64,000 nt of DNA, from positions 57,660,001 to 57,724,000 of the forward strand of contig NC_042997.1 of NCBI RefSeq assembly GCF_006345805.1, read 5' to 3'. This DNA is from Octopus sinensis (Eukaryota). The notes under the pieces were generated by a model that saw only the letters and a list, made by a program, of their open reading frames with translations, was not told the origin of the DNA and did no database searches. The number at the start of each line of letters is the position of its first letter. The first letter of the stretch is position 1. This document shows, piece by piece, positions 17,242-64,000 of this stretch. Both the position numbers and the translations under genes were made by a program.

Positions 17242-17586
17242 CCGTTCGTACCTGGCCCTCTCCTGAGCTTTTTCAAGTTTTTCGGCTTCTAACCTTGAAA
17301 TAGTGTATTTAAGGTCTCCTATTTCATTGTTTTCCTGTTCATAACGAATGGCTAGGGCTTCCAAAAGCTCAAGGGATCGTACGACTTTGTGCATAAGCCC
17401 TGTGATCGCCTCTGATCCATAGCAGTCTATCAACTTTTCAAGTTCTTTGCCAATGCCTGATGCCTGGTCATAAACGTCTGCAACGGAGATACCATAGCTA
17501 TTTTCAATACTAGACTCGCTAGACATCAGGAAATGTTCGTCGTTCATTCTAACTCTCCGAATGGTTTCAATTAAACAGGAATCCAT
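17242..17586 (-). CDS. RILPL1: RILP-like protein, first coding exon (RH1 domain), 115 codons; remaining exons not found in window
   Basis: Translation ISVADVYDQASGIGKELEKLIDCYGSEAITGLMHKVVRSLELLE matches the RILP/RILPL RH1 pattern (LTVMDVYDIAS..GHEFERVID..G.EAI..LMPKVVRVLE.LE) better than JIP3/4. It ends RARYER|GTGAGT with a phase-0 donor at 17241. The symbol is family-level; the start could also be the second Met. Confidence 0.9.
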
Positions 17587-17894
17587 CTAATTGACAAATA
17601 ATTTGGGCCTGTATACCACCACCCTAAATCGAGTCGTGGTATACAGCAGGAGCCCTTTGCGAGAATTATATATAAAAACAAGCTAATGTCAGACTTGGAA
17701 AAACTGATTCAATACAGTAGCACTATTGACGAGAGTAAGAGGGAGGATGTTCCCTCTTGACAGTTTTAGCGACAACTTTCCTTCGCTTCACTTCGGCACA
17801 ATTTAATCTTCGATCTCCATAGTTTCATTTAATCTTCCTCCTTTGACTCCTTCTCCTCTTACCATCATTAATGTTTTCCTCCCTTCTTCTCTCT

Positions 17895-17970
17895 TTATCC
17901 AATGTCCCGTCACCCTGCAAATGTCACGTGATAACAATTTTACGTCACTTCCGCGTTAGTAACAACCAGC
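17895..17970. promoter_or_regulatory. Putative RILPL promoter motif cluster in a CpG-retaining region
   Basis: CCAAT 17899-17903, GTCACGTGAT 17923-17932, TTACGTCA 17940-17947, CACTTCCG (ETS, reverse) 17946-17953, GTTAGTAAC 17955-17963; about 330 bp upstream of the ATG. Confidence 0.5.
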
Positions 17971-19029
17971 TGTCGTATGATTCATATAATTTCCCGGTTA
18001 TTAATACACCATATATTAAAACGAATGTGATAGAGATAGAATATAATATACGGATTACGAAAAATAAATAGACTAAAAATAATCTAAGACGTATTATACA
18101 CTCTGACACACCACCCACATTTGTTTATGCATTGGTAGTCATTTAGCGAGCTGGTTTCAATTCCCACTCCACTCATGCCCTTGATAAAAACATTCCCTTC
18201 TACAAATCTGAATCCATATAAAAAATTGATTTATATAGAGGGAAGTGAAATGGTCAGGTGAGTAAGTTATTGGACAATTGACTCAATTTCATGATTCATT
18301 TTGTGTTCGCTGCTAGAGAGCACTAGAGCTGATGAAACTGAGTTAGCTCTCTTCATCTTAAAAAAGGTGTCATACTCACAGAGGGATTTTAACAAGACCC
18401 TGAGAATCCAACTGGATGTCTCTTAAGGGGTCGACTGACCTACTAGAAATAGCAACCAAATCTCTTTCAAATTACACCCTACCGTATTAAGGACATATTG
18501 GATAATGTAGTCAGATATGCCCATAAAAAGACTGAGTGTTTATATCAGGAATACTTTTGACCATAACTGTTCAATAGTTTGACACGCTAAACAATAACGA
18601 GCGAGCCTCTACGTATTCATTCGGTCTGCTCGAAATAGTGACCAAATCTTACCCTATTGTCTTAAAAAAAAATCACATAGGATTACTTAGTACGTGTTAC
18701 ACCATTCGAAGGGTGCAAGAATGGTCGTGCCTGAAATGCTTTTGATTAAAGGTCAGTCCCTCTAAGCTTTATCAGAAACACTTGTCAGTTTACGCAACAA
18801 TCAAATGTTTAATCATATGATACCTATTTCCAAGCATTTGAAAGTGTTCACACAGACATGGCGCCATGACACTGTTTTGAACTGTGACTCTTTCCACTAG
18901 TGATCTCGTAACCTACTAAATGTGTTCATCTACATCTCTCATATAGAAAAAAAAAATTAAGTAGTAATTGTGTTTGGGGAGCACTATGCTCATCATCATC
19001 GCACGCGCGCGCACACACACACACACACA

Positions 19030-19250
19030 TCGTGGTCGTCGTCATCATCATCATCATCATCATTTAACGCCCGTTTTCCATGCTGGCATGGGTAGGACGA
19101 TTTGACAGGAACTGACTTTTCAGAAGACTGCACCAAGCTCTGCTGTCTGCTGTGACAGTTTCTACAACAGACTGCCCTTCCTAATGCTAAGCGCTTAACA
19201 GAGTATAGGTGCTTTTTATGTGGCACCAGCAGCTGTGAGGTCACCAAATA
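19030..19250 (-). mobile_element. RTE-tail SINE fragment with (ATG)n tail
   Basis: (cat)n-ttaacg..ttccatgctggcatggg motif shared with copies at 22000-22110, 25620, 38390, 49532 and 55692. Confidence 0.7.
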
Positions 19251-19663
19251 ACTTACGGCTTCTCAATTTGAGTGAGAAGCAGTACTGAGGGACAGAAAAG
19301 CTGTCTTGCATCAGAAGAGAAATACCTCAGATGGAGAGAGAAGAGAAAGATGGTGAAGATGTGACTGGGAGGGGTCAGGGGTCATACAGGGTGGTGTATA
19401 TAGTGAGTGGACTGGGAATTGGAGATGAGTAGGTAGGTGAGTTCACAAAATTTCAAAAGGCTAGTGAGTGCTAGAGGTGTGGGGATGTAATGAGTAGACA
19501 CTAGTAGAGAGCAGAAGATATTTAACAGGGACATACTGTGTGCAGGTAGGTAGGTTGATATGAAAGGAAGGGGAAAACAATGACCTCTGTGAGGCTCAAC
19601 ATCTGAAGGTCACTTCTCGTCACTTCATCCGATATCTTCCTGGGTTTTCCTGTTATACATACA

Positions 19664-20050
19664 CTAGCAGTATCGCCCGGCGTTGCTCGGGTTTGTTTCG
19701 ACCCTTTAGAATTGGAATTTTTGAAAAGTAAAAATCTTGCATTATGTAGCTTGTTATTCTCTTTAAGTGAACATTTTTCTGGTTGAAATACACCAAAAAA
19801 TGGTGACACAGCAGTCAAAAAAATCGTAAAAAATAGGGATTTTCATAGAAAAAAAAGCACCTTTTTGATGTAAATAATTTTTGGTGTTAACATGGTCCAA
19901 TTTGAATTTTATCTTCTAAGGAATGAAGAGCAAGCCTTCTTCTATCATACTCTCAATTTTGGTCAACTTGTGCTGCAGGGTCTCAGAGGAGATAGTGTTA
20001 GTTGAAGGCTACCAAACCTGCCACACACAGACAACTTCAGCTTTATATAT
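19664..20050 (-). mobile_element. Non-autonomous Helitron-like element
   Basis: Minus-strand 3' end cccgagcaacgccggg hairpin followed by CTAG (19667-19664) and T; 5' end merges with (TA)n. Confidence 0.55.
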
Positions 20051-20391
20051 ACATATATATTCATATATATATATATATATATGTTTTCAATTTTTTTTCT
20101 CTTGTTGTCTGCGTGTTTAACTTGTTTGTTTTTGTACTTCATGCTGTTTACAGGTGGTGGCTTCCTGTACCCATATGTGCATATATATATAGATATAGAT
20201 ATAGATAGATAGTATAATCAGCTGAAATTGCGAGGATAATCTGATGCTTGACTGAGGAAAGAAAACTTCGAATGACCTGTCCTGGTTTTCTTTGTATCAT
20301 CTATCTGGATGTTTAGTTGTCCCATTTTTGTATCACCTAGCTATCCGGATGTTTTGCTTTCTTGTCCCACTTTGTATTTATATATATATAT

Positions 20392-22506
20392 AGCAAGAAA
20401 AAAGCAACAAAAATGGATCAATATCGCCAGCCTCATCTGGCACCTGTGTCGGTGGCACATAAAAACACCATCCGAAGACCCGGCAAGACTAGTCAGGCCA
20501 TAACCCGTGACCCCTACCTGGGACGTAGTCAGTCCACCTGTGCATACCTTCCTTCTTGTGACACTTGTGAAGACCTGTTGAGGCAAGTAAAAATCAAATC
20601 AAAACAAATCAAAATAGATGAACATCAATGGAATTTGTATCTTTGTGGTACCAGTGCCGGTGGCACACAAGAAAACCATCCGAACTTGGCGGTAGCCAGT
20701 ACCGCATCGATTGGCTTCCGTGCTGTGGGCATGTAGTACCGCATCGATTGGCTTCCGTGCTGTGGGCACGTAACAAACACCATCCAATCGTGGCCGTTCG
20801 CCAGCCTCATCTGGCACCTGTGTCGGTGGCACATAACACCATCCGAAGACCCGGCAAGACTAGTCAGGCCATAACCTGTGGCCCCTACCTGGGACGTAGT
20901 CAGTCCACCTGTGCATACCTTCCTTCTTGTGACACTTGTGAAGACCTGTTGAGGCAAGTGAAAATCAACAAATCAAAAAATCAAAATCAAAACAAATCAA
21001 AATAGATGAACATCAATGGAATTTGTATCTCTGTGGTACCAGTGCCGGTGGTACACAAGAAAACCATCCGAACGTGGCCGTAACCAGTACCACATCGACA
21101 GGCCCCCGTGCTGTGGGAACATAACAAACACCATCCGATCGTGGCCGTTCGCCAGCCTCATCTGGCACCTGTGTCGGTGGCACATAAAAACACCATCCGA
21201 AGACCCGGCAAGACTAGTCAGGCCATAACCCGTGGCCCCTACCTGGGACGTAGTCAGTCCACCTGTGCATACCTTCCTTCTTATGACACTTGTGAAGACC
21301 TGTGAAGACCTGTTGAGGCAAGTGATAATCAAATCAAATCAAAACAAATCAAAATCGATGAACATCAATGGAATTTGTATCTTTGTGGTACCAGTGCCGG
21401 TGGCACACAAGAAAACCATCCGAACGTGGCGGTAGCCAGTACCACATTGACTGGCCTCTGTGCTGTGGGCACGTAACAAACACCATCCGATCGTGGCCGT
21501 TCGCCAGCCTCATCTGGCACCTGTGACGGTGGCACATAAAAACACCATCCGAAGACCCGGCAAGACTAGTCAGGCCATAACCCGTGGCCCCTACCTGGGA
21601 CGTAGTCAGTCCACCTGTGCATACCTTCCTTCTTATGACACTTGTGAAGACCTGTTGAGGCAAGTGAAAATCAAAAAATCAAAAAATCAAAATCGATGAA
21701 CATCAATGGAATTTGTATCTTTGTGGTACCAGTGCCGGTGGCACACAAGAAAACCATCCGAACGTGGCGGTAGCCAGTACCGCATCGACTGGCCTCCGTG
21801 CTGTGGGCACGTAACAAACACCATCCGATCGTGGTCGTCTGCCAGCCTCGTCTGGCACCTGTGTCGGTGGCACATAAAAAACACCATCCGAGCGTGGCCG
21901 TTCGCCAGCCTCGTCTGGCACCTGTGTCGGTGGCACATAAAATCACCCACTACACTCTCGGAGTGGTTGGCGTTAGGAAGGGCATCCAGCTGTAGAAACA
22001 CTGCCAGATCTGACTGGCCTGGTGCAGCCTTCGAGCTCCCCAGACCCCAGTTGAACCGTCCAACCCATGCTAGCATGGAAAGCGGACGTTAAATGATGAT
22101 GATGATGATGATATCGGTACAATTGTTTCGTATGAAGACCACCTTTATTATGGCTGCAAATATTGCAGCAAATACGTGTGACCCGTACTCATCAGCCGAA
22201 AAAACATCTGAGTTCTCAAAACATCTAAGGGGGTGAGGCTACACTCATGAAACATTAGGGATAGTTCTATAAAAATCAAATTTAGATAATAAACTGACTT
22301 CCAGTTCTGATTTTTATAGAACTATCCCTAATGTTTCATGACTGTAGCCTCACCCCTTTAGATGTTTTGAGAACTCAGATGTTTTTTCGGCTGATGAGTA
22401 CGGGTCACGTGTATTTGCTGCAATATTTGCAGCCATAATAAAGGTGGTCTTTGTACGAAACAATTGTACCGAAATATTGATCCATTTTTGTTGCTTTTTT
22501 CTTGCT
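20392..22506. mobile_element. Foldback (almost fully palindromic) MITE of about 425 bp, interrupted by a retroelement
   Basis: Left arm 20392-20426 plus 22117-22278, 29-nt loop, right arm 22308-22506; the arms differ by about 6 substitutions and a 2-bp indel; TA-rich flanks. Confidence 0.9.
20427..22110 (+). mobile_element. 5'-truncated RTE-LINE 3'-end insertion carrying a tandem array of about 340-390-bp units
   Basis: gatgaacatcaatgg recurs at 20617, 21005, 21357 and 21695; ends in the canonical aacccatgctagcatggaaagcggacgttaaa(tga)n tail; TSD ATATCG at 20421-20426 and 22111-22116. Confidence 0.9.
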
Positions 22507-22622
22507 TATAATCACCCCGCATTATCTTATGGCTAATACCGTATAGATTTCTGGTGCATCTAAGTTAAGTACCTCATTCATGTGAATTCAACAGAACTCA
22601 CTTGAATCTTAATTGCTTTTAC

Positions 22623-22664
<42 letters not shown>

Positions 22665-25616
22665 CTTATATTATTATATATAATACAGATGGATTAATAT
22701 TTAAATGTAATTTGTTATGTTAATCATCAACATCTGGGAGAAGTGGCATGGCTAAGTATGTGAACATATTTTAAAAGGCACAGACGGGGTTGGATTGTTA
22801 AGAAATTATCTTCACAATAATGAGGTTCAGTCCTAGTATATAACACCTTCTACCATTGTCTAAAGAGAACCTCACACTTATGACTGAAACTGAAAGGACA
22901 GAGGTTATGTGAAAGCCAATCAAATAGCCTGTATCAGTGATAATGGGCCTCACCCTGTCATATAGTGTTATGCTGATTGTGCTTCAATATTATGTTCAGG
23001 ACGGTTGTCCCCTTTATTTCATACGAGTTGTTGCCCTTGGTTCAAGCAGAACCTTTCACAGTTGAAGCAATGCCTTTAATCCTAGTATGACAAGAAATAT
23101 TATTTCTGGTACAGTTTGCTGTCGTGCATTTGGATTCAATGGCTAATTTCATCAATATGGAAGTTTATACAGAATGAAAACAAGACTTAAGAATATGGGT
23201 AATATATTCTTATGCTCTTTGTCCAAAAACAAAACAAAGAGCTGCTGGGGCCCTCTCTAATATACATGAATGTTTACGTGACCTAACAACCACTGACATT
23301 GGACTAAAGACATTGGACTGATGAGCTTGCCAAGATTTATCATTCTTTAAGATTACATTACAAGAGCATAAATGGCATTAAAGAATTATATTCTTACAAA
23401 TGACCTTCAGTTACAAATCTGAATGGCTTCCTCATTTAGTAAAAGTATTTTTTATCAAAGACTAACCTTAACCTACTTTTGTATATATGTCCAGAATTGC
23501 AGGTGTGGAAGCTGAAGAGATGTAACAATGGGCTGAATGGTATAAGGTCATGCAAATACTGATCAAATTGTGAGGTGTAGTGTGTGTTTATGACAATCCT
23601 TTATTTCTCTGGCTGCAAGTAACTTATAGTATTTCTATGGAAATGAATTACCACATGAGAAGGATATATGATTACTGTAGTAAAAAAAGAAATTTAAAGT
23701 AGGAACTCATGAGAGTGGAATAGTCAAGCATTTAAAGTTAAACGTTATTCAATTCAAGATTTATGCATATCATCCATACCTTCAATAGAAATAAAGAAAG
23801 GAAGGTCAGCCGGTCAGATGATATGATTATCAACACAGACTTGTCCAAATCTATTATTTGATGTTTGTAGAATGGATAATACTGAAAAACATCCCAAAGT
23901 AAGCTGTTTGAATCTTATAAAGCATTATCAAAGCTTATATCTAAGAGATGTTCCATATAATATTTAACTTAGGAAAGCATTCAGATCTGAATATTATCTG
24001 CTCTTCTAGGCCAGTGAGCTGGCAGAATTGTTAGCATGCTGGGCTAAATGCTTAGCAACATTTCGTCCATCTGTATGTTCTAAGCTCAAATTCCACTGAG
24101 GCTGATTTTGCCTTTCATCCTTTCAGGGTCGATAAAATAAATACCAGTTGAACTCTGGGATCAAAGTAATCATCTGACCACCCTCTCTCTCTCTCTAGCT
24201 TACTGGGCTTGTACCAAAATTTGAAAACAATATTTGCTCTTTTGATGACATTTATGTCATCTTAGAGGATGGGTCTTTATAAGGTGGTTTTATCATAATT
24301 TGTTGGAAAAAAGAACAAGATGGCTCCAATTTGTTGGTCACTTAAAAAAACAAAGTCTTTTAGTTTCAAAGACTCTTGCACTCAGTGAAGTAGTAGTGAT
24401 GCTAGTTTCTAAGTGGCTGCTATGATACAGCAGATTTTTCCGCTGTCCAGATTATGTGATGTACTTTGTGAAATTGGCAATTTATCATTTATAGAGTCCT
24501 TAAAGTTATCTATTCTTGTTAGTAATTGTCATCTTAGAGGTGATGTAATAAAATTAAAAGAAATGATGATCATCAAGGAAGTTAAGTTAAAATTGACCAG
24601 AAGTCATGGACAGATTTCAGATCAACTTCCTCTAAAATTTTGAGACAAACTGAATTATTACTGTTTATTTTTTCGTAGCACCACTTCAAATAATATGTTT
24701 GGGAACTTTGGATATTTGTAGTTTGGGGAATTTTCCGTCGAAGGCATTGCTTAAACATGGAACTCTATTTGAAGTGTTATACGATGTTTTGTGAGAACTA
24801 GCAGTGGAAACTAAAAACCTGAGGAGACTAGCGAAGTTGATACGAGGTTGTCTCCCTTGTATAAATTACAACGCATGCAGTGAACTGTTGGAGAGTAATA
24901 GTTTTCAAAAACGTAAATGTTAATTGTTGAGATGTGTAAAAATATGATATGAGATATTATATGATTTGAAGAGTTTGAAGCCTTCCTTTGCTAATATATT
25001 ACTACTTTAATAGTTGGCAGTTTCAGCGATCGAATAACTGAACATCTGTTTATTAAAACTGGGGATTCATTCATTCACTACATTTCATTTTTCATGTAAA
25101 ATGATTTTCTTGGTTATATAACTTTATAGTTCACCCACAGAGTTTAACTACGAATTTAATACTCAAATAACTCACTGAAAAAGGGAAATTTAAAAATAAA
25201 ATGTTATGTTTTCCTTAGTGATCATTAATATATCAGGGTCTCTGTTTGCCTTTGTGTCTGTGTTTGTCTCTCCATCACAGCTTGACAACCAATGTTGGTG
25301 TGTTTATGTCCCCTTAACTTAATGGTTCAGCAAAAAGAGCCCAATAGAATAAGTACCAGGCTTTAAAAAACGTACTGGAATCAATTCATTTGACTTAAAA
25401 TTCACGGCGGTGCCCCAGCATGGCCGCAGTCTAATGACTGAAACAAGTAAAAGATAAAAGAAAATATTAAATATATATTTATTTCTTTATTTTTATTTTA
25501 TTATGTATTTAGATATTGGAAAAGTACATGTGTCTTTTTGCTTTTCCTTACCTTACTTACAAAAACAGATTCAACCTACTTTATGCTTGAGAGAATAGTA
25601 ACAACAAAGAAACTAA

Positions 25617-52609: not shown

Positions 52610-54237
52610 GCCCATTCCTCTAGTGAAACCCAGTGACCTCACAATGCCTCTATAACAGTGTTATTACTGGAGTTAAGAACCACTGTTTAAGACTGATTTA
52701 GTCATTCATCTACCTGGATTGATGTGTTATACATGAGGTCATTGAAAAAAGAAGCGTGATTCAGGTGCAGCATGCTAGACTACATAGATGTTTACTGTAT
52801 TGGTTTGGTGGCTCACAACTTTGAGTTCAAGCTTCTATAAGTACCAGTCCAACAGAACTAAATGATTTAAATGAAAATTAAGAGGAAAACAATGATTGTA
52901 CATTTAACATAGCAACTAATAGCATCTAAGTAACATAAAACAATCTCTAAAGGAATACTTTATTTACTAAATCTGTGACAGGTCTAAAAAAATGACACTT
53001 CAAAACCAAGGTGTATTCTCTTTTAGCTTGCTACTTAAAAAGCAATCAGCTAGAAATATATCCCTGCTGCTTTAATCCATATGACTAATGAGAAAAAAAA
53101 AAACAACTCAGATAATAGCCTACAAAAAAAAGGCACTAAAAAGGGGAGGAGAATATAAAAATGTATAAGCACTAAATAAGCTTAATGCACACACACTCAC
53201 AGCGCACGCGCGCACACACACACACACACACATGCATGCATGCATATACAAAAACACACAGACATTGTGTTTTTCATAAAAATATATATAATACTCTATT
53301 TTCTTCAATCTATCCAACTGAAAAATAAGGAGCATTGCCACTTAATAACTGATTGCTTATTTGTAAAAATTCTTGCTTAATGTAGTAAGGCCAAGAAAAT
53401 GTTTAACTGATTAAAACTATACCTGTAGTAAAAATTATAAAAAAAACATTCACAAAATAAATCACCAGCAGAAACAGCCACAACAACCACATCTTAAGGC
53501 AATTTTCCAGTTAAAGCAGAAGTTAGATTTGTGGTCTCTATAACAATCTATTCCATTTTGTTCTAGCCTTTACATTCACCCTCAACAACACCTCCTTCTT
53601 TATTTTCTCTTCCATCACTTTTAGCTATCTTTTTCTCAGTTTCCCCCTTCTTCTACTTCCTTCCACATTCATTTCCATCACTGCTCTTAGTTACTTTCGT
53701 CCTTACTTGGTACATGACCCAACCATCTCCTTCCCTTTCTTTCCACAACATCTTTTACTGGTTCTATTCTTATCAAATGAAAATTGAATGAAGGCTTCAG
53801 TGGAGAGCAAGTCTGGTGATAGTTCTAGATATATGTTTATCTTATTACATCTCAGTGAATTATGGCATATTCCAGTGCTAGTTGTCTGAACATAAGATGA
53901 TACAGACATAGAGTTTGAGTGAATAAACTCAGACATGATAACTGAAAAAATAACTTGAGAGAAATTACATTTGTATGAAAAGTAAATAGTTACATCCATG
54001 CCAGACAGTATTGTGAGCCAAAAATATTTAATTCATTAAAATTACAACCATATTGAGAAGAAAAATATCAAGATCAAACAAACACACAGCTGTTTGTCAA
54101 CCCTACTGCTATTATTAGATTTAGTCTCATACTACAAGAACTTATTCACTGCATTAAATAAGGTTTTTTATGTTGTATGATTAAACTGCTTACAAAACAA
54201 ATGATTAAAAAAAAAACAGGAACATCTTTGGACTTAC

Positions 54238-54342
54238 CAAATTAGCAACTTTTGCCACACCTTCAGAGCATATTGTTACATCTTTACTTGTTTCTGCTAT
54301 ATACTGGCTGGAAGCTTTGGGTGATAAGATGCTTTCAGACAT
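54238..54342 (-). CDS. QNG1: Queuosine salvage protein, coding exon 1 (MSESILSPKASSQYIAETSKDVTICSEGVAKVANL)
   Basis: Matches the C9orf64 N-terminus (LNPRESSKFIAENSRDV.I...GV..VA.L). The acceptor at 54372-54373 leaves 29 nt of 5' UTR; donor GTAAGT, phase 0. Confidence 0.93.
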
Positions 54343-55691
54343 ATTGACAAATCACTTAGTTAACACTGTTTCTGGTAACAGAAACAAAAGATGAGTTATT
54401 ACAATACAAAATACAGCAGACATTTAGAACTACATCAAACACATTCTAAATCCAATAAATAATTTAGCATTAGGCATTTAATGTTTTAAACTTTTACATT
54501 ATCATCATCCTCATCATTTAACATCCATGTTCCATGCTAGCATGAGTTGGACAGTTTGACATGTTTGTTTTGGCATAGTTTCAACAGCTGGATGCACTTT
54601 CTAACACTAACCACCGTACAGAGTCTACTGGCATGGGTGCTTCTTGTGGCACAATGAAGAATGGCGAATTATACATCTTTAATTAAATGTTTTTTTCGGC
54701 AAATAAAATTCCAACATATGTTTTTGTTGTATAAGTGTCTGGGGGTTCTTAATGCAATAGTTCTGTACCTCCAATCAATTTAAATTAAATCAATTATGGT
54801 GCAAATTCCAATCCAAAAGCTGACATTCTTATATAACTTTTTACAAATTGTTCCCCAGATAGGTTTATGAAGCAAACTGAAATATCTAATACCAAAGTTT
54901 GCTTCACTTGTACAGAGAACATCTTGAAAAAAACTATATGAGAATGTCAGTCTTTGAATTGGAATTTGTACTGTAGCAAGGATTCAAACCCTGACTGCTA
55001 GATTCTCAGTCAGATACCATGAATGAGCCCTCAAAGTTTCACATGATCAGTCTATAAGTCAAATAATCAGCATGAGGCTGTGGAATGATATGGTTTTCTC
55101 AAATGTTCTAAAATTTAACTTCTTGTCCCCTATTAAAAACCGTTTCCGGTGCTCAATCCATTGCATGGTGTTGAAGGTGGCTGACTGATTCATGTGCCTC
55201 CTCTCTTGCCAAGCAGACAGTTCTGAACATTTGCACAGACAACTCCAGTTTCTCGGACAAATCTATTTTGAGCATTCACCCAATGTGTCATAAGAAACCG
55301 CTATGGAGATGGCGTAGTTTTTCTCACTATCCTATTTGGCAATTATTAATATTGTTCATTGTAAATAACCAACACCAAATATCATTATGCCTGGCAAGAA
55401 ATATCAAGTTATGTGTATGTGACTTTGCTTCAGTAATTATTCTTGCAGCCAACACTGACACCCACTTTGGCAATGGCGATGTATACTTTTAAAGTATATC
55501 TTCATTGATAACTCAGCTTGAGTAACGAAGCAAACCTGTATGCCAATACTGTGGTTGATTTAGTATAAATTGAAGTATAGAACTATCGCATCTAAGAACC
55601 CTAGAAACTTATGCATCAGAAACAAATATCAGAATTTTATATGCTGAAAAATATTTTGCTCCAATCTTTATCATGAATATATATATATATA

Positions 55692-55935
55692 TCATCATCA
55701 TCAACATCATCATTTAGCGTCCGCTTTCCATGCTAGCATGGGTTGGACGGGTCAACTGGGGTCTGTGAAGCTGGAAGGCTTCGTCAAGCCCAGTCAGATC
55801 TGGCAGTGTTTCTACGGCTGGATGCCCTTCCTAACGCCAACCACTCCGCGAGTGTAGTGGGTGTTTTTTACGTGCCACCTGCACAGGTGCCAGACAGAGC
55901 TGGCAAACGGCCACGAACGGATGGTGTTTTACGTG
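55692..55935 (-). mobile_element. Young RTE-tail SINE copy
   Basis: (cat)n-ttagcgtccgctttccatgctagcatgggttggacgg..ctaacgccaaccactcc..gtgccac. Confidence 0.85.
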
Positions 55936-55949
55936 TATATATATATATA

Positions 55950-56160
55950 GTTAATCCAAACATGAAAACACAACAACGTGAGGACGTGGAACAAGTATAG
56001 TGTTATTGGACGCTCAGGAAAGAAAGAAAGAAGGAGAGTTTAACATTTTGAGTGGAGCTCTTCGTCAGAAACATAGGAGAAGGAAAGATCCAAAGAAGGG
56101 AAGACGGAGGAAAAAAAAATCGCCAACGGTACACACGCGGTCACATTTTGAATATATATA
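55950..56160 (-). mobile_element. Penelope-like terminal repeat remnant with a decayed minimal hammerhead motif
   Basis: Minus strand gtttCTGACGAaGAGctccaCTCaaaatgtt; flanked by (TA)n on both sides. Confidence 0.5.
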
Positions 56161-56170
56161 TATGTACATA

Positions 56171-57173
56171 CAGGGGTTGGACAAAATAATGGAAACACCT
56201 AGCATCATAATTTTGAAATATTTATAAACCCATCAAAAGCTTGTTTATTTTTATGTTTTTTGATTTATTATTAGTGTTGCTTAATATGTTTTGCTAAAAT
56301 TGCTGTTCTTTTCATCAGAAAAAAGTAATTAAATTTCATTAAAATGACAGATCTATCGGACTTTCAAAGAGGTCAAATTGTTGGTGCTTGTATGGCAAGT
56401 GCCAATATAATGAAAACAGCCAAAATGTTTGGTGTATCAAGAACTACTGTCTCAAAAGTAATGACAGCTTTGAGAAAGAGGGAAAAACTTCTTTGTCAAA
56501 ACAAAACTCCAGAAAAACCAAAACTTTCAGATAGGGGAAGTGTATGGAGAGGACTGTATGAGCCGCACATAAATGTACAAGTAGTTCAAACGTTTTCAAG
56601 ATGGCCAAAAAATGTCAATATTGGCGAACGTTTTGGGAGACCAGCAACCAGCAGAACTGAGAAAAGCATCGTAGACGTGTGCAGCTGTGAGGCGAAATTG
56701 TCAAATCATCATCCATGAGTTGTCAGAGGATGTACAGATTAGTTATCGTTCAGTTCAGTCCATTATCACTGAAGATTTGGGTATGAGATGCGTGTCTGCC
56801 AAGTTTGTGCCAAAACTGCTTTCAGCTGACCAAAGACATTTGGACTTCAGTTGCACAAGATCTTGAGTGTATTGAGAACGATGAAATCTTTTTGAAAACT
56901 TTACGTAGGCCTCTGTGCAGGTATTGCTAAGCTTTTAGCAAAATTTGATGTAGATTCTCTGCTCAACCTTCCCCGTCATGGTCAATGTGACAATCACATG
57001 CTACACACCTTCCTTCCAAGCACTGCTTTAAACAGTGGAAGTGAGCTAGAACGTTAAAACTTATTGCATATGCATAGCCGAATACAAGGTAAATCTGTGC
57101 CGAGCGGCTTTACTCTGCGTGCTTCAGCTTCGTTACTGTAGCAACAGTCCGGATACTTATTGGTCAACCCTCG
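56171..57173 (+). mobile_element. Tc1 left end (56171-~56535) joined to a mariner derivative (~56536-57173)
   Basis: TA|caggggttggacaaaataatggaaacacct TIR and MTDLSDFQRGQIVGA..TAKMFGVSRTTVSKVM; then the mariner HTH region and a right end ..ggtcaaccctcg|TA shared with 34315-34985. Confidence 0.8.
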
Positions 57174-58879
57174 TATGTGTGTGTGTGTAAGGAATGGATC
57201 TAAATGATAAAACTTCATCAAACGTTACAAACGAAGAAAGGTAAAAAAAAAAACTAAATCAGGAGGATTATCGCAGTTTAAAAATCTTTAAAATGTTTAC
57301 GAAGACCTGAGATTTTATTGGTTCTCTATATGTTTAAAGAAACACTTACAGGTCTGGGTGTGGAAAATATAAATGTACAAAAGTGGGCACTAACATACTT
57401 AATGCACTGGGCTAAAATATGTTAATTAAACTATCCCGGTAGTGAGAACTAATAATTATCTTATTCAACAAATCTAGTCAACGAAAACAATGCGACATGT
57501 CTCGCCTCCCATTTCTGGATTAATGATAATCAACCTTGGCATAATTCAAAGGGAAATAACTAAATACAGTTTATCTGGCACACTTCCAATCCTTTACTTG
57601 TTAAGACTGATAACAAGCTTTCAGACATTGACCTTTGTAGTGATGTTGCAGCTTCTTTATAAGAGACATAATGTTAGTGACAATAATACAATTTTATTGT
57701 TGCTGGTAGCAATGATGCTACTTAGTACTTTAGATGATCTTTAACTCCAGGTGAATCTTGATTGAACAAATCTTATAATCAAAGCCAGTTCAGCCATAAC
57801 CATCTCATCGTTTTAGGGGTGTCTATGACTATACATTATCCAATGTGTCCCTTATTTGTAGGCCGTGTTGATACTGACATGACAATAGTGGCTTCGGTGG
57901 AAGTAGTAACATTAGTCAATGCCAAAGTAATGACCTTTTGTGAATGTAACCATTCTAATATGAATATATAGCTAGGATTACTATTAACACGGCGATTTTT
58001 TTTTTTTTTTTTTAGTACATATTCTCCGGGAGTGATAATGAAAGCAAAACCATTCGGGAAAATACATTAAAAGAAAATGACATGAACAATCTGCAAACGG
58101 CGAATCTTTGAATTTCAGTTAACAAAATCGTAATATGCAAATAAATAAGAGGAATCAAGCGTAAGGGCATGTACTGCAAGAATGGCCTAAAATAGCCATT
58201 GGCTTAGAAATATTTAGTACTTTAATACAAAACAATTAGTGTCAGACAATGTTGTGTAACAGGATGAGAGGTCCCCGCACTGGACCTCTCATCCTGTAAT
58301 TGAACCCTGATAATCTGGTTTCGTTTTGCTTAGAATGGCTTAAAAATATAGATTTAAAAAGTATTTATCTCTTGAGTTAGAAAAAGGTATAGTCTTTAAC
58401 TAAATTAAGTATGATTTTGAATGCAATTATGAAGGGGCAAAAATAACAGAGGGTCAGAAACACTATTGAATATTTAGCTTAACTAATTAAAGTTTAAATA
58501 ACGGTATTTTTGACACTTACTTTTCGTTCTGTGAATTATATGTGAAGAAATTTGGTTTGTGAGTAGGTATGAACGAAAAATATGTATAAAGATAGCAGAT
58601 TAAAATATTTTGTAGAAACTAATTATTTGCATTAAGTTATTTATCTTTGTTTCAAAAGTTCAAGGAACATAAAGGGAAGGAATGTATCTCGTCTCTAGCT
58701 ATACTTTGATACTCAATATTGTAAATAGTTTTATGTAATAACTTAAATGTTTATTTTCTTTTTAATTTGATGAGGAAATTCTGTTAACTAAATATTTCTA
58801 AATTAATTATAAACAGATAAATATAGCAATAAATAAAAAAAATTACATGTATATAAATAATAATTCCAAAGCTGTGGAA

Positions 58880-58930
58880 ATGTATTTCCGGTACCCGGTT
58901 TCATAACGGTTTCGTTCACCGGAAGTTTTT
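58880..58930. promoter_or_regulatory. Putative QNG1 promoter (paired ETS sites); a non-coding first exon may end at the GTAAGT donor at 58520
   Basis: ATTTCCGG 58884-58891 and CCGGAAGT 58919-58926 in CpG-rich DNA. The acceptor before the ATG exon requires an upstream exon; minus-strand GTAAGT donors occur at 58515-58520 and 57344-57349. Confidence 0.4.
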
Positions 58931-60199
58931 CGTCTGTGTCCTGCAAGTGTATTTATGATTCTGTAGTTTCAGCTTTATGCCGTGTGGAAAAAGAAAAATT
59001 CTATATTTGTAGTTCTTATTAACGAACATACACCTCTCTCTCTCTCTAATAGCGGTGCGCTAAAAATCGCGAGTTCTTGGAATCTGTATGTTTTGAGTAT
59101 CGTACGCACTAAATGTGAAAAGAAAGTTAAGGGGGCTCCCCCTTTTACGTATATTTTCAGGTTTTACATTTTTTTTTGTTTATCATATTAATGTTCTGGA
59201 GTAGCTTAATCTACCATACCAACAAAAGTGTGCTCTCACCGACTTTGTTTCCAAATAATTTTCAGAAAAGGGGATATTTTTTAAATGAAATTATCTACAA
59301 TGCTTTTCTGCTGGTGTTAATTACAATTATATCGTATAATTATATGGTGTAAATTACAACTATATGAAAGAAAATAAAATAAAGTAAGCAAGCGCACATA
59401 CATATCGACACACATCAAATAATGTTTCTAAGTGCATCAGCATGGCTGCAGCTATGAGCTGAAACTACAGCAAAAAAAAAAAAGTTGTATTTTGTAGATA
59501 TGTCTGTCATACATGTCAGTATTTGTGCTCGCCCATCAATTTTTGTCTTTTTCTTTTCTTTCTTTTTTCCGCATTAAATTCCGGTATAATTGTAACCTGC
59601 ACTATCTGAAAGGCATTTGTAGAAAATTTCATCTAAAAAAGTCCCGTTTTTCTGAAAACAGAGTCATAGTTGGGGGCACAATTGTGTAGGTATGCCCCTT
59701 AGACGTTCAAAATGGAGATCTCGGGAAAAATAATAAAGTCAAAGCTGAAAAATTACGGAAGAGAGAGAGAGAGATTAAAAAATCACTCCTCCCATTTTTT
59801 TCTTTGTAGATTCGTAATCTATACTTAAATCATACACATCCGAATAAATTATGCATTTTGGCACACTTGATGATTTGCGACTTTATTCTCTTAGAATGCA
59901 ATAGAGACAGATTGATTGGAGGGGTGTGCAACGAATTGGTCACAGCGTGAACACATTAGCTAGATTGCCCTGCGATGTTCGCTCTGGCTACCTGCAGTCT
60001 GAGTTGAAATACTGCTGGAACTTTCGTCGGAGGGAAAAGAAATATTAACGGTATGTTTTTATGAGCAGAAGGTGAAACTAAAGTGTGACCTGTGAGCATT
60101 ACATGATGTATGTATATAATGTTATTTGTATAATGATATAGACCGAATGAGTTATTATTAAAAAATCTGCGTTGTTCAGAGAAGCCTGGTGCGCTGTCC

Positions 60200-61033
60200 A
60201 TCAGGTGTCAGAATACGTGGTACCAACCGAGCAGAAACCATTATGCCATGTTCATTGTGCAGAGTACTCTCAACTCTCTTACGGGATCTAGTAATAGCAT
60301 TGCTATTTGATTTATAGTCAATCGCCTGTCATCCATCACCATGTGGTGAACACAATCAATGTATTCCTTGATGGTGGCAGTTGCAGGACGTCCAGACTTT
60401 AGGTCATCTTCAAGATTCTCCATTCCCCTCCTAAATGTAGCAGACATATTAGCATGAATGTCATTGATCTTCCGTGAGCAAGCAGGACACAAATTTTGTT
60501 GCAATTCTTTTCATTTGCTAGTCCTTGCTCAAAATTTGTTGGCAGGAGCTCCAGGACACACCAGTCATATCAACAAGTTTGTCAATTGTTCGGTGGCGGT
60601 GCTCCAAGATCAGTTCATGAAGTTTCATGTTTTCATTCATTTGGGAGGTCAATGGACGCCCTAAACGAGGTTGGTCTTCAAGCGACAAATGACAATTCGT
60701 AAAGCGTGAAAACCACTCATAAACTCGTGTTTTGCTCATGGCAGCGTCCTTCTAAGCTGTTAGAAGCATGACAGCTGTTTCGGCCTCTGTTTTCCCAAAC
60801 AGAAAACAGAATTTCACGGGAGCACGCTGATCCCTCATTTCAGCCATCGCAAAAATTGACGAACAAGGGAGAAGCACTGCAAAGCAAAGATGCGCCATGT
60901 GACAGTAGAACTACACTCGACGACGCTGGTCAGCATACCGATGCCTGGGGTCACATCAAGTGACTTCTAGCATCCGAAGCCTGAACTACAACAGGCCTGT
61001 CCCACAGAGAATATTTCTGGTTACTTTGGGGGT
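60200..61033 (-). mobile_element. Two adjacent mariner transposase 5' fragments
   Basis: MSKTRVYEWFSRF...LEDQPRLGRP...RTIDKLVDMTGVSWSSCQQILS and LEDDLKSGRPATA...DDRRLTINQIA. Confidence 0.8.
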
Positions 61034-61239
61034 ATCCCCTTGTATGTATGAATGCAAGGAAGGGGCGATCCAGTGTGTGAATACCGTGAAAAACAATTAG
61101 AGATCGGATTCCTTCAAGAGTTATGTCTCTTGTCCCAAAACCTGCATAAATGATAACTGCCAACAGAGTGAGGTCAGGGAACAGGTGAAAAGGGACTGAT
61201 ATGTGTAGGAGTGTTGGAGGAAGGGGATTAGGTAAGTTT

Positions 61240-62660
61240 AAACTCGTGCTTTACCAGACTTCAGGTTGTGGTGGTGGGAGGATTGAGTGAAGGAGCCCTA
61301 AGGTTTATAATCATGTTGGAGCCTGTTGGTAACAATCACATTCTTTCATGTGGGTACAGGCAAAAAACTTCACTCTTGCAGGCTTGGATAAGTGTCCGGG
61401 TGAAGAGAGTTCTTCAAAACAGTTCTTTTCTCAGCTAGACATAACCTGCACTTCCTGCTTTTGTTGAAATTAGGCTTGCACTTCTTAGCACTCTCCACTT
61501 GATCTTGTAATCCATGGTGCTTTCCTCCAACGACCATGCATGCTAAGCCAGGGCTATTATATTCCACTTCTCATTAATATTAAAGGAGGACTTATGATTG
61601 TTATGGATGTATGTAGACAAAATCTCCTGGACTTTCTGTTGCACCCACATACTCTCGCACATTTGACTGCCTGTTGGGGGTCATTTGGCGTCACTTGTGT
61701 CTCATATACAACGATCACGGTGTTGCAGCTGTCGTTGAGAGGTCATGTTGTGTTGCTGCTACTTGAACATCTTGTCTCTGTCTCTGACGTGGGTCCACCA
61801 CCTAAAATTTTCAAGAGACTAGGTGTAAACTAAAAGAAACACTTAAAGCGTATCTATTAAATATTTTATAGAACCTATTCATACAGGGAAGTGTATAGTC
61901 ACTAAGCTAAGGTAGATCTTACCAATACAAGCCTTAACATTTTGGGAGAACAAGTGAGAACCACAATACCTTCCAATTATGTTTTCTCTTGTTGGGGTTA
62001 TGGTCACGTGTGTAATTAATCCTATCTTTAAAATCGGTGGCAGCCAGAGGCCTCATTGTGGTATGGAGCCGTGAGGTCGAAAGTCTCTTGTAAACAGATT
62101 GGAGAATCTTCTCCTGATCCCTTTCATAAGGTTCGCGAACACTATGGTTGGAAAAGGAAGCTATATTAATGTATGTCAGTTTGTCATTCGGCTTCTTAAA
62201 AGCACCAGATTCTAACTTTAAGGTCACATCAAGGAAATTATCTGTCTTTTGGTTGGTTTCTATAGTAACCGGGAAGCCTAGGGAATTCAAGGTCCTTCCT
62301 AAGCCTAGCGAGTATGTGGGCCACCAATGTTGCCTAAGCTAGTTGAAGGGAATTTCTTATTAAGTAAATCTAAAATAAAAATGCCAACGAGGTCACACAC
62401 ATCAGCGTTGTCGAAAGCACCATTCGCTACGTCGAAGAAGTCTTTTAAATCGGTGCGCTTGGCCCAGGCCAGTCCGTTGAAAAGCAGGGATTTTTTGTTT
62501 TTTTGTATGTGTGTATGATAATGCCTCTGTCCTCATCTGTAATCTCATTGTGTGCGTGTGCACTGGCGTAGTTAGTGGGTGCGGCACGTTTCATCTTGTA
62601 GGCTATTGCTGTAGGCATTATGTGTTTTTTGTGGGGTTCAGGGCTGCCCCGGGTAGCACA
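61240..62660 (-). mobile_element. Degenerate Penelope-like element (RT C-half plus GIY-YIG)
   Basis: ITDEDRGIIIHT, TIETNQKTDNFLDVTL..KPND, PLNDSCNTV.VVYE..EYVGATE and KCRLCLAEK in shifting frames. Confidence 0.85.
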
Positions 62661-63142
62661 CACTCTAGTGTGTGTATGTGCATGTTATGTGGAATTGAGG
62701 TCTAACTGATTGAATGCGTATCGTTTTCGTTTGTTCACTCACTGCGTGTATACATGTGTATATGTATACTGTTTTCTCTCTCTCTCTCTTTCTCTTTCCC
62801 ATCACCGCTTATGAAATCTGGCTGACGTTTTTTTCATTGTCTGGCCGTTGCCACCTCTCTGACACTTGTTACTACTTCCCTTTTTCATCTCTCTCTCTCT
62901 CTCTTACATACACACATGTACACACACTAAATCCCGTTTATATTTACTTCTACACCCGTTGATGTTTCTACGCTCCAACGAAGGATTCTCTTCAAAACGT
63001 CACGTTTCCCTACTTCTCTGCGGCCTAAAAATTCTGTTTAAATCTATATGTATCATCTTTTAACAACACTGAACATCTCTACTTCCCTCGGATTCTACTG
63101 TTTTACTATACTAGTGCATTTCTTATTGCCATATTCATAACT

Positions 63143-64000
63143 ATGGAAGTTGATATTGCAAGCGCGAAAACTGGGAAATGTATTGTTTCCTTCAGTAACC
63201 TCAAACCTCTATCGACAGTGAAAGATGTTAAAAAGGAATATAAGAAATTCAGTCCGAAATTGGCATTTGAAAGACAATCATTTCGTAAAGAAGCGCGAGG
63301 CAGGCTTCTTAGAGATGACGAAACACTAGCAAGTTTGGGATTCAACAAGAAAGCTGTCCTTTACTTCAAAGACCTTGGTCCTCAAATAGGATGGACCACA
63401 GTATTTCTCGCAGAATATGCTGGACCCCTTTTTATCTATGCATTCTTTTATATTCGTCCTAGTTTTATTTATGGACAGAATGCTTTGGACGAACCTCGTG
63501 CCTTCGTAGTGGATCTCGCTGCCGGTTGTTGGTGCTTTCATTATGGCAAAAGACTACTGGAGACCCTGTTTGTACACCGATTTTCTCATGCAACCATGCC
63601 TATTCGTAATATTTTCAAGAATTGTGGGTACTACTGGGGCTTCTCGGCTTACATTGCTTATTATATGAATCATCCTCTGTACACTCCACCTACCTTCGGT
63701 AACAAACAAATATATACAGGTCTTGCACTTTTCATCCTCTCAGAAATCGGTAATTTTTCTATTCATATTGCACTACGCAACCTCCGGCCCCGCAATTCTA
63801 CGCGGCGGTTGATACCTTATCCGGGCCTGAACCCTTTCACTTGGCTCTTCCATCTCGTTAGCTGCCCAAACTACACCTACGAGGTGTTTGCTTGGATCGG
63901 TTTTACAGCGATGACACAGTGTTTTCCTGTCGGACTCTTCACCCTGGCAGGTTTCTATCAAATGACTGTATGGTCTTTCAACAAACTTGTAAATTACAAA
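63143..64000 (+). CDS. TECR: Very-long-chain enoyl-CoA reductase (TECR/Tsc13 family), intronless, 3'-truncated by window edge
   Basis: 286 open codons from ATG 63143: ubiquitin-like N-terminus, then YFKDLGPQIGWTTVFLAEYAGP, HYGKRLLETLFVHRFSHATMP, NIFKNCGYYWGF, NHPLYTPP, NPFTWLFHLVSCPNYTYEV; no introns or stops. Confidence 0.97.
   Translation, partial: MEVDIASAKTGKCIVSFSNLKPLSTVKDVKKEYKKFSPKLAFERQSFRKEARGRLLRDDETLASLGFNKKAVLYFKDLGPQIGWTTVFLAEYAGPLFIYAFFYIRPSFIYGQNALDEPRAFVVDLAAGCWCFHYGKRLLETLFVHRFSHATMPIRNIFKNCGYYWGFSAYIAYYMNHPLYTPPTFGNKQIYTGLALFILSEIGNFSIHIALRNLRPRNSTRRLIPYPGLNPFTWLFHLVSCPNYTYEVFAWIGFTAMTQCFPVGLFTLAGFYQMTVWSFNKLVNYK

What the first reader, a model, noticed from the sequence alone, without database searches (positions are those of the whole stretch)
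63143..64000. Intact intronless TECR: probable functional retrogene
There are 286 uninterrupted codons covering nearly the whole enzyme, whereas the neighbouring genes have short exons and multi-kb introns and vertebrate TECR is multi-exonic. Key motifs (DLGPQ, EY, HYxKR, NHPLY, PNYTYE) are intact. CpG-containing codons are frequent, unlike the QNG1 exons, implying escape from germline gene-body methylation as for tissue-restricted genes. It may be a duplicate of the fatty-acid elongation-cycle reductase, relevant to cephalopod long-chain PUFA synthesis. It is absent from the ORF track because it runs off the edge.
Basis: partly seen in the sequence, partly recalled or inferred. Interest (0 to 1): 0.7.

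Follow-up and report, generated by a model that had tools for sequence, protein, structure and literature searches.

The report
Ancient intronless octopus TECR gene
This is an intact, selectively maintained octopus gene for the last enzyme of the fatty-acid elongation cycle; it lost all 11 ancestral introns, but every TECR gene found in octopuses and cuttlefish is intronless too, so it is an old replacement of the original gene, not a recent extra copy.

Summary
Window 63143-64000 (+) holds 286 stop-free codons of a TECR (very-long-chain enoyl-CoA reductase). The window is Octopus sinensis chromosome CM016859.1, and there the ORF closes 18 codons past the edge, giving 304 aa. All 13 published catalytic, NADPH-contact and HACD-interface residues are present. 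dN/dS is 0.06-0.12 across orthologues out to Argonauta.

An RNA-mediated origin is well supported: Haliotis and Pecten TECR each have 12 coding exons with 11 introns at identical positions and phases, and all 11 positions fall inside the uninterrupted window ORF. But no intron-bearing parent appears among annotated octopod proteins. The second octopod paralogue (B, next to BolA) is also single-exon, and so is the cuttlefish gene, where a Sepia esculenta mRNA is colinear with a genomic contig.

The simplest history is one retrogene replacement before octopuses and cuttlefish diverged, then a duplication older than the Octopus-Argonauta split. Copy A (this gene) is the more canonical copy; B has lost an invariant NADPH-contact tyrosine. 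High CpG is real but belongs to a ~10-kb domain and to all the cephalopod copies examined, so it does not indicate tissue-restricted expression. This is a new example of a known kind, of modest interest.

The parts
63143..64000 (+). Codons 1-286 of the 304-codon TECR-A coding sequence, a single coding exon. The last 18 codons and the TAA stop lie just outside the window, at window-equivalent 64001-64057.
   Evidence: L009 (O. sinensis CM016859.1) is identical to window 53143-64000 and continues ...NYK|REFSDFPRNRTAIIPFIL*. This equals the annotated protein P0147.
63143..63373 (+). N-terminal ubiquitin-like domain (TECR_N), residues 1-77.
   Evidence: PF21696, E = 3.1e-15, full-length match 1-77 of 77.
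63593..63988 (+). Membrane reductase domain (Steroid_dh / 5-alpha-reductase fold), residues 151-282. The domain continues beyond the window edge.
   Evidence: PF02544, E = 2.6e-19; colinear with the solved C. elegans TECR.
63413..63418 (+). Codons for catalytic Glu91-Tyr92, equivalent to CeTECR E95/Y96 and human E94/Y95.
   Evidence: mapping. Residue roles are from PMC13464631.
63632..63634 (+). Codon for catalytic Tyr164, equivalent to CeTECR and human Y168.
   Evidence: PMC13464631.
63034..63142 (+). Upstream block conserved from Octopus to Argonauta. It probably holds the 5' UTR and core promoter, and includes the near-invariant 21-nt element TCGGATTCTACTGTTTTACTA about 50 nt before the ATG. 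No conserved splice acceptor is present.
   Evidence: the A. hians alignment starts at 63034; four-species alignment; the candidate AG at 63113-63114 is deleted in O. bimaculoides. A promoter role is inferred, not shown.
55600..64000 (.). CpG-preserved domain (o/e about 0.5-1.2) that contains the gene. It extends to about window-equivalent 65,600 and is flanked on both sides by strongly CpG-depleted gene bodies (o/e 0.0-0.3).
   Evidence: 500-bp profile of L009.

Best explanation
The window holds copy A of the octopod trans-2-enoyl-CoA reductase (TECR). TECR is the NADPH-dependent endoplasmic-reticulum enzyme that carries out the fourth step of each very-long-chain fatty-acid elongation cycle. 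The ancestral molluscan gene had 12 coding exons. In the cephalopod lineage a processed, reverse-transcribed mRNA copy replaced it (retrogene replacement) before octopuses and cuttlefish diverged. In octopods that single-exon gene then duplicated into A (this locus, downstream of QNG1) and B (next to BolA), before Octopus and Argonauta split. Copy A keeps every known catalytic, cofactor-binding and HACD-docking residue and evolves under strong purifying selection, so it most likely acts as a canonical, probably the main, TECR.

Shown here: the identity of the gene, its completeness, the absence of all 11 ancestral introns, selective constraint, the three intronless cephalopod lineages, and transcription of the cuttlefish gene.

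Inferred: the reverse-transcription mechanism, that a single event was responsible, loss of the parent gene, and enzymatic activity and expression of copy A.
For: Identity: Pfam TECR_N plus Steroid_dh; solved CeTECR at 3e-101, colinear.

Completeness: L009 is identical to the window over 10,858 bases, and the ORF ends 18 codons later.

Ancestral structure: exact GT-AG exon chaining reproduces the Haliotis and Pecten proteins from 12 exons each. The 11 introns have identical positions and phases in both, projecting onto octopus residues 2, 19, 36, 51, 86, 123, 159, 183, 198, 217 and 262, all inside the window ORF (gene spans 14 kb and 9.2 kb).

Intronless relatives: A. hians A (909 bp); A. hians B and O. 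bimaculoides B (915 bp); O. bimaculoides A; and a 122-kb genomic contig of lineage C with 304 open codons. Lineage C is cuttlefish: the contig from run SRR20545815 is poly(A)+ RNA-seq of Sepia esculenta, and it is colinear with the genomic contig from about -310 to the stop.

No other cephalopod TECR cluster appears in two searches whose top 120 hits reach down to 56-59% identity.

Tree: cephalopod clade 100/100; A 100/100, B 100/100, C 97/92.

Selection: dN/dS is 0.06-0.12 within A with dS up to 1.06; 0.08 in B and in C.

Functional residues: all 13 are kept in A (roles from PMC13464631).

Orthologous position: the O. sinensis and O. bimaculoides loci are colinear over 20 kb, and A. hians shares the proximal upstream block and a downstream block.
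Against: No poly(A) remnant or target-site duplication was found. That is expected, because synonymous sites between A, B and C are saturated, but it leaves intron absence as the only retroposition hallmark.

Absence of a parent rests on annotated proteins only; whole genomes could not be searched.

The 10-kb flanks showed no synteny between the C locus and either A or B, so relocation is not demonstrated, and intron loss in place by cDNA gene conversion is not excluded.

The branching order of A, B and C is unresolved (A+C 74/21; AU p = 0.42 for A+B and 0.15 for B+C). The duplication may therefore predate the octopus-cuttlefish split, with loss in cuttlefish.

The locus tables give the coding range only, so a 5' UTR intron further upstream in copy A cannot be excluded.

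Transcription of copy A itself was not verified, because its Logan run series could not be traced.
Confidence: 0.75

Rival explanations
1. One reading: a comparatively recent, lineage-specific retrocopy of an intron-containing TECR that still exists elsewhere in the Octopus genome, kept as a tissue-restricted duplicate.
For: The coding sequence is intronless while molluscan outgroups are multi-exonic. A second TECR does exist in the genome. CpG is not depleted.
Against: The second TECR (B) is itself single-exon. No third copy appears among annotated octopod proteins. The Argonauta orthologue is at dS about 1.06 and is intronless, so the gene is old. The cuttlefish gene is also intronless. Copy A is the more conserved copy at functional sites. 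High CpG is shared by all the copies examined and by a 10-kb domain.
Confidence: 0.06
2. Wholesale intron loss at the original locus, either by gene conversion with a reverse-transcribed cDNA or by successive intron deletions, with no insertion at a new site. The intronless gene then duplicated.
For: This gives the same end state, with all 11 introns gone in A, B and C. No poly(A) or target-site duplication was found. It also explains simply why no parent gene is found.
Against: Losing all 11 introns without relocation is rarer than retroposition. A and B lie in unrelated contexts (QNG1 versus BolA), 126 Mb apart in O. bimaculoides and on different scaffolds in A. hians, so at least one copy moved. 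Neither copy sits beside a GET3/ArsA-type gene like the Pecten neighbour within the flanks seen, although synteny at this evolutionary distance is weak evidence.
Confidence: 0.15
3. A processed pseudogene or otherwise non-functional open frame that only looks intact inside the window.
For: The window cuts the ORF, so the stop codon is not visible, and no expression data for copy A were obtained.
Against: The ORF closes normally in the same genome. It is intact in five species. dN/dS is 0.06-0.12 over dS about 1. All 13 functional residues are kept, and only 3 of 72 otherwise-invariant positions are changed.
Confidence: 0.02

Closest known systems
TECR / TER / GPSN2 (C. elegans art-1, yeast Tsc13, Arabidopsis CER10): very-long-chain trans-2-enoyl-CoA reductase
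   Same: The two-domain architecture is the same (TECR_N ubiquitin-like domain plus Steroid_dh membrane domain). The protein is full-length colinear with the solved C. elegans enzyme (3e-101). The catalytic Glu-Tyr and Tyr, seven NADPH-contact residues and two HACD-interface residues are identical. It is 56-65% identical to TECRs across animals outside cephalopods.
   Different: The coding gene is a single exon, against 12 coding exons in other molluscs. Three of the 72 positions invariant in 40 other animals are changed (G218N, A278S, Y292F), and H282L is shared by all cephalopods. Activity has not been assayed.
Retrogene replacement / orphaned retrogenes (for example amphioxus SYCP1, tetrapod Sowah; PMC5803294)
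   Same: A single coding exon is found throughout a clade whose outgroups have a conserved multi-exon gene. No parental copy is detectable. The gene is under purifying selection and keeps the ancestral function. Paralogue B lies head-to-head with another gene (BolA), much as AmphiSYCP1 does with CHIC.
   Different: Here the replaced gene is an essential housekeeping lipid enzyme, and the replacement was followed by a duplication in octopods. Loss of the parent rests on annotated proteomes only. Relocation is not demonstrated and no insertion scars remain.
Octopod TECR paralogue B (O. bimaculoides XP_052831176.1; O. sinensis XP_036359893.1; A. hians GAB1599215.1)
   Same: About 70% identical to the window protein, 304 aa, a single coding exon, dN/dS 0.08, and CpG not depleted.
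   Different: It sits at a different locus, beside or inside BolA, 126 Mb from A on the same O. bimaculoides chromosome. The invariant NADPH-contact Tyr (CeTECR Y289) is replaced by Ser or Asn. Y138 is Phe in three of four B sequences, and Leu96 is Pro in the three mapped.
SRD5A steroid 5-alpha-reductases / polyprenol reductase SRD5A3
   Same: They share the Steroid_dh fold and the NADPH-dependent double-bond reduction mechanism (7c83, E = 7e-5; PMC13464631).
   Different: They lack the N-terminal ubiquitin-like domain and have an extra first transmembrane helix. The match is far weaker than to TECR, so this gene is not a member of that branch.

Membership tests
TECR (very-long-chain enoyl-CoA reductase) | N-terminal ubiquitin-like TECR_N domain | tested here: met
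   PF21696, 56.4 bits against a cut-off of 27, profile positions 1-77 of 77.
TECR (very-long-chain enoyl-CoA reductase) | C-terminal Steroid_dh (5-alpha-reductase fold) membrane domain, colinear with a solved TECR | tested here: met
   PF02544, 70.1 bits against a cut-off of 22.6. C. elegans art-1 structure at 3.3e-101, residues 8-285 against 12-290.
TECR (very-long-chain enoyl-CoA reductase) | Catalytic Glu and the two tyrosines shown by mutagenesis (human E94, Y95, Y168) | tested here: met
   E91, Y92 and Y164 are present. Roles are from PMC13464631.
TECR (very-long-chain enoyl-CoA reductase) | NADPH-coordinating residues (CeTECR R141, R150, R219, Y248, E251, K285, Y289) | tested here: met
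   all seven are identical in copy A (window residues 137, 146, 215, 244, 247, 281, 285). Paralogue B lacks the last one.
TECR (very-long-chain enoyl-CoA reductase) | HACD-docking residues (CeTECR T185, Q263) | tested here: met
   T181 and Q259 are present.
TECR (very-long-chain enoyl-CoA reductase) | Enoyl-CoA reductase activity in the elongation cycle | not testable with these tools
   This needs complementation or an in vitro elongation assay.
Retrogene (processed, reverse-transcribed gene copy) | All parental introns are absent from the coding sequence | tested here: met
   11 introns with identical positions and phases in Haliotis and Pecten. All 11 positions lie inside the uninterrupted window ORF.
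Retrogene (processed, reverse-transcribed gene copy) | Poly(A) tract remnant at the 3' end of the insert | tested here: not met
   there are only 7-13 nt A-runs 530-1540 nt after the stop, not shared across all species. The age of the event (saturated dS) makes decay expected, so this does not argue strongly against retroposition.
Retrogene (processed, reverse-transcribed gene copy) | Flanking target-site duplications | tested here: not met
   only short two-copy matches at chance level. The 11-nt pair near the ATG is not conserved among orthologues.
Retrogene (processed, reverse-transcribed gene copy) | An intron-containing parental gene elsewhere in the same genome | tested here: not met
   the annotated proteins of O. 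sinensis, O. vulgaris, O. bimaculoides and A. hians contain only the intronless A and B copies. A whole-genome tblastn was not possible.
Retrogene replacement (orphaned retrogene) | Single-exon gene throughout a clade whose outgroups keep a conserved multi-exon gene | tested here: met
   (octopods and the cuttlefish lineage) against (gastropod, bivalve). The cephalopod clade has 100/100 support.
Retrogene replacement (orphaned retrogene) | Parental copy lost from the genome | tested here: inconclusive
   No parent is found among annotated proteins, but unannotated or decayed copies could not be searched for.
Retrogene replacement (orphaned retrogene) | The retrogene lies at a locus unrelated to the ancestral one | tested here: inconclusive
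   the 10-kb flanks share no genes between loci A, B and C. The outgroup neighbour (an ArsA/GET3-like gene in Pecten) was not seen near A or B. The flanks are too short for genomes this gene-sparse.
Retrogene replacement (orphaned retrogene) | The retained gene is functional (constraint and expression) | tested here: met
   Constraint: dN/dS 0.06-0.12. Expression is shown only for the cuttlefish lineage, from poly(A)+ RNA-seq. Expression of copy A was not tested.

The most novel reading that the evidence does not exclude
All coleoid cephalopods run an essential housekeeping step of fatty-acid elongation on a retrogene that replaced the 12-exon ancestral TECR before the octopus-cuttlefish split. 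Octopods then split the job between two copies: A as the canonical reductase, and B with a remodelled NADPH pocket (loss of the invariant Tyr289 equivalent) and therefore a changed cofactor, substrate or regulatory role, perhaps tied to the specialised lipids of the cephalopod nervous system.
Probability: 0.15. Interest if true: 0.55.

Novelty: new member of a known kind. Interest (0 to 1): 0.33.

Why it matters
The enzyme and the gene model are already in public annotation ('very-long-chain enoyl-CoA reductase-like'), and retrogene replacement is a known phenomenon. What is new is the history. A core lipid-metabolism gene appears to have been replaced by a processed copy across coleoid cephalopods and then duplicated in octopods.

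That gives a clean, datable rare genomic change: 11 introns with identical positions and phases in a gastropod and a bivalve, and none in octopus or cuttlefish. It could serve as a character in cephalopod phylogeny once Nautilus and Vampyroteuthis are checked.

It also adds to the picture of reverse-transcriptase activity shaping cephalopod genomes. And it flags paralogue B, with its lost NADPH-contact tyrosine, as the copy worth functional study. For the scan, the lesson is that 'intronless next to intron-rich neighbours' does not by itself mean a young retrocopy.

Tried and rejected
1. Poly(A) remnant and target-site duplications. I searched the extended O. sinensis locus and its orthologues and found only chance-level short repeats.

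2. A 5' UTR intron. The candidate acceptor ...actag|tg at 63113 is deleted in O. bimaculoides, so I rejected it as a conserved splice site. More distal UTR introns in copy A remain untested.

3. Synteny between the lineage-C locus and A or B, by tblastx on the 10-kb flanks. Nothing matched outside the CDS, so this is uninformative.

4. Branching order of A, B and C, using a careful ML tree plus AU tests. It is unresolved. Shared derived residues conflict: G218N favours A+B, and Y292F favours A+C.

5. dS between the paralogues. It is saturated, so the duplication cannot be dated from sequence.

6. Expression of copy A. The contigs from runs SRR11869384 and SRR11869390 are colinear with the genome, but the run type could not be traced. 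I therefore do not count L004 as transcript evidence.

7. The bacterial-type promoter and terminator scan does not apply to a eukaryote and was disregarded.

8. Pfam on neighbouring ORFs. It gave only sub-threshold helix-turn-helix hits consistent with transposase debris, and nothing for the 111-aa minus-strand ORF downstream.

9. Literature. No paper in the library links TECR with cephalopods, retrogenes or intron loss.

10. P0161's 321-aa length is an artefact: a metagenome gene caller read through the TGA stop. The real ORF is 304 codons.

Full report
**What is in the sequence.** Window 63143-64000 on the + strand is an open frame of 286 codons that starts with ATG. The nearest upstream in-frame stop is at 63026-63028, with no other ATG in between. 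The stop-free run (63029-64000, 324 codons) is twice as long as any other in the six frames of the window. From local base composition, about 0.001 such runs are expected by chance. The ORF list omits it because it runs off the window edge.

**What the protein is.**
- Pfam gives TECR_N (residues 1-77) and Steroid_dh (151-282), both far above their cut-offs.
- The best solved structure is the C. elegans very-long-chain enoyl-CoA reductase art-1, at E = 3e-101, colinear over 8-285 against 12-290 of 309 residues. About 18 residues are therefore missing at the window edge.

**Source and completeness.** The protein search found an annotated 304-aa protein (P0147) identical to the window's 286 residues.
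- Its locus is L009, on Octopus sinensis GCA_006345805.1 chromosome CM016859.1. L009 is identical to window 53143-64000 at all 10,858 positions.
- There the ORF continues ...NYK|REFSDFPRNRTAIIPFIL and ends with TAA.
- So the window corresponds to 57,660,001-57,724,000 of that chromosome, and no lesion lies beyond position 64000.
- A Q_salvage (QNG1) gene lies upstream on the minus strand.

**Ancestral gene structure.** TECR spans 14 kb in Haliotis cracherodii and 9.2 kb in Pecten maximus.
- An exact exon-chaining search, which required GT-AG introns and perfect reproduction of the annotated protein, gave 12 coding exons in each species.
- Ten of the eleven exons after the first have identical lengths in the two species; one is 113 versus 110 nt.
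- All 11 introns have the same positions and phases in both. They project onto octopus residues 2, 19, 36, 51, 86, 123, 159, 183, 198, 217 and 262.
- The common ancestor of gastropods and bivalves therefore had these 11 introns. All 11 positions lie inside the uninterrupted window ORF.

**Relatives in cephalopods.** Two protein searches and the cluster listing show only three cephalopod lineages.
- **Lineage A.** It comprises the window gene, O. vulgaris (one residue different), O. bimaculoides (98%), an unidentified Octopus relative (95%) and Argonauta hians (87-88%).
- **Lineage B.** It is about 70% identical to A and is found in O. bimaculoides, O. sinensis/O. vulgaris and A. hians.
- **Lineage C.** It is about 74-75% identical to A.
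- **Gene structure.** The coding range equals the coding length, so there is a single coding exon, in A of A. hians (909 bp), in A of O. bimaculoides and O. sinensis (915 bp), and in B of A. hians and O. bimaculoides (915 bp).
- **Lineage C in genomic DNA.** On a 122-kb genomic contig its ORF is an uninterrupted 304 codons. The 321-aa call for P0161 is read-through of a TGA stop.
- **Identity of lineage C.** One of its contigs comes from run SRR20545815, which is poly(A)-selected RNA-seq of juvenile Sepia esculenta. So C is the decapodiform (cuttlefish) gene and it is transcribed.
- **No UTR intron in C.** Contigs about 99% identical to that Sepia RNA-seq contig are colinear with the genomic contig from about 310 nt upstream of the ATG to the stop. 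No intron is present there either.
- **No third copy.** All animal TECRs in these lists are at least 56% identical to the queries, so an annotated intron-bearing octopod TECR should have been listed. None was.

**Phylogeny and timing.** In a careful maximum-likelihood tree the cephalopod sequences form one clade (100/100). A (100/100), B (100/100) and C (97/92) are each monophyletic.
- Their branching order is unresolved: A+C has 74/21 support, and AU tests do not reject A+B (p = 0.42) or B+C (p = 0.15).
- Both A and B include Argonauta and Octopus orthologues at similar depth (dS 1.06 and 0.90). The duplication therefore predates that split.
- The most parsimonious history is one loss of all 11 introns before octopodiforms and decapodiforms diverged, followed by duplication.
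- The duplication occurred either on the octopod stem, or earlier with loss of one copy in cuttlefish.
- From general knowledge, not tested here, the coleoid crown is of the order of 250 million years old.

**Function and constraint.** Pairwise dN/dS within A is 0.06-0.12. B and C give about 0.08.
- A 2026 cryo-EM and mutagenesis study of the HACD-TECR complex (PMC13464631) names catalytic E95/Y96/Y168 (C. elegans numbering), the SRD5A-like tyrosine Y138, NADPH contacts R141, R150, R219, Y248, E251, K285 and Y289, and HACD-interface residues T185 and Q263.
- After correcting a +1 offset in the deposited chain, all 13 are identical in the window protein and in every A orthologue.
- Paralogue B replaces the NADPH-contact Tyr289 with Ser or Asn. 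Three of four B sequences also replace Tyr138 with Phe. Both positions are invariant in 40 non-cephalopod animals.
- Of 72 columns invariant in those 40 species, copy A in the Octopus species changes 3 and copy B changes 5.
- The window copy is therefore the more canonical enzyme, not an obviously specialised duplicate.

**Locus features.** The O. sinensis and O. bimaculoides A loci are colinear over about 20 kb. A. hians shares the gene, about 110 nt upstream and a block about 4 kb downstream.
- A 21-nt element about 50 nt upstream of the ATG is nearly invariant out to Argonauta. A tempting AG acceptor at 63113 is deleted in O. bimaculoides.
- AATAAA or ATTAAA signals lie 220-250 nt after the stop in three Octopus species (offsets recomputed).
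- No poly(A) remnant or target-site duplication is detectable. That is expected for an event older than saturated synonymous divergence.
- In O. bimaculoides, A (129.09 Mb) and B (3.04 Mb) are on the same chromosome, 126 Mb apart. In A. hians they are on different scaffolds.
- B lies head-to-head with BolA in A. hians, and inside the annotated BolA range in O. bimaculoides.

**CpG.**
- It is a property of a ~10-kb domain, from window ~55.6 kb to ~65.6 kb, flanked by gene bodies with o/e 0.0-0.3.
- It is also a property of every cephalopod TECR copy examined (0.82-1.05).
- It fits a lack of germline gene-body methylation. It does not single out this copy, and it does not show tissue-restricted expression.

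**Conclusion.** This is an intact, constrained TECR gene of RNA-mediated origin. Its history is an ancient retrogene replacement shared by coleoid cephalopods, followed by an old duplication. It is not a recent retrocopy with a living intron-bearing parent.
- The main gaps are a whole-genome search for parental relics, Nautilus and vampire-squid data, chromosome-scale synteny, and direct evidence that copy A is expressed and active.
- No paper in the searchable library reports this. The phenomenon itself is well known (PMC5803294).

Noticed in passing
L003 5001-5915 (O. bimaculoides) and L002 5001-5915 (A. hians): The second octopod TECR paralogue (B) has replaced the invariant NADPH-contact tyrosine (CeTECR Y289) with Ser or Asn. 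Three of four B sequences also change Y138 to Phe, and Leu96 is Pro in the three mapped. B is nevertheless under purifying selection (dN/dS 0.08). It sits head-to-head with, or inside an intron of, a BolA gene.
   Followed up: partly
window ~1-54342 (- strand gene, start at 54342): A QNG1 (Q_salvage, PF10343) gene lies on the minus strand. Its first coding exon is short, with the frame closing after 45 codons. Its gene body is extremely CpG-depleted (o/e 0.07-0.3), in sharp contrast to the adjacent 10-kb CpG-preserved domain that holds TECR.
   Followed up: partly
window 56344-56866 (+) and 60241-60739 (-): ORF fragments with sub-threshold helix-turn-helix Pfam hits (HTH_28, HTH_23, HTH_32) look like decayed DNA-transposase remnants (Tc1/mariner-type, by my own reading of the sequences) in the intergenic stretch between QNG1 and TECR.
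   Followed up: partly
window 16001-24000: A second region has raised CpG o/e (0.6-0.7) and the highest G+C in the window (0.47 at 20-22 kb), inside otherwise CpG-depleted sequence. It may be a promoter or CpG island, or a young repeat.
   Followed up: no
L009 13001-16000 (window-equivalent ~66.1-69.1 kb, outside the window): A strongly CpG-depleted stretch (o/e 0.0-0.1) begins about 2 kb downstream of TECR. It contains a 215-nt block conserved with A. hians (L009 14934-15145 against L001 13414-13628, 78%). This is probably an exon or conserved element of the next, methylated gene.
   Followed up: no
L008 10001-10966: The 321-aa protein P0161 in the protein collection is an artefact. The metagenome gene caller read through the TGA stop of a cuttlefish-lineage TECR gene carried on a host-derived contig in an ENA 'metagenome' assembly (ERZ21867824). 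The true ORF is 304 codons.
   Followed up: yes
L004 1623-1958 (-), equivalent to L009 ~11220-11640: A 111-aa minus-strand ORF sits about 350 nt downstream of the TECR stop in the sister-species contig. It has no Pfam match, and the equivalent O. sinensis region aligns only at about 80-85% DNA identity with gaps. It is probably spurious.
   Followed up: partly
L011-L020 (Sepia-lineage contigs): The longest cuttlefish-lineage contigs are about 2.6 kb (roughly 480 nt 5' UTR, 918 nt CDS and 1.23 kb of 3' sequence). The Octopus-relative contig L004 has a very similar layout (372 + 915 + 1225 nt). This hints that L004 may also be a full-length unspliced mRNA, but its run type could not be established.
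   Followed up: partly
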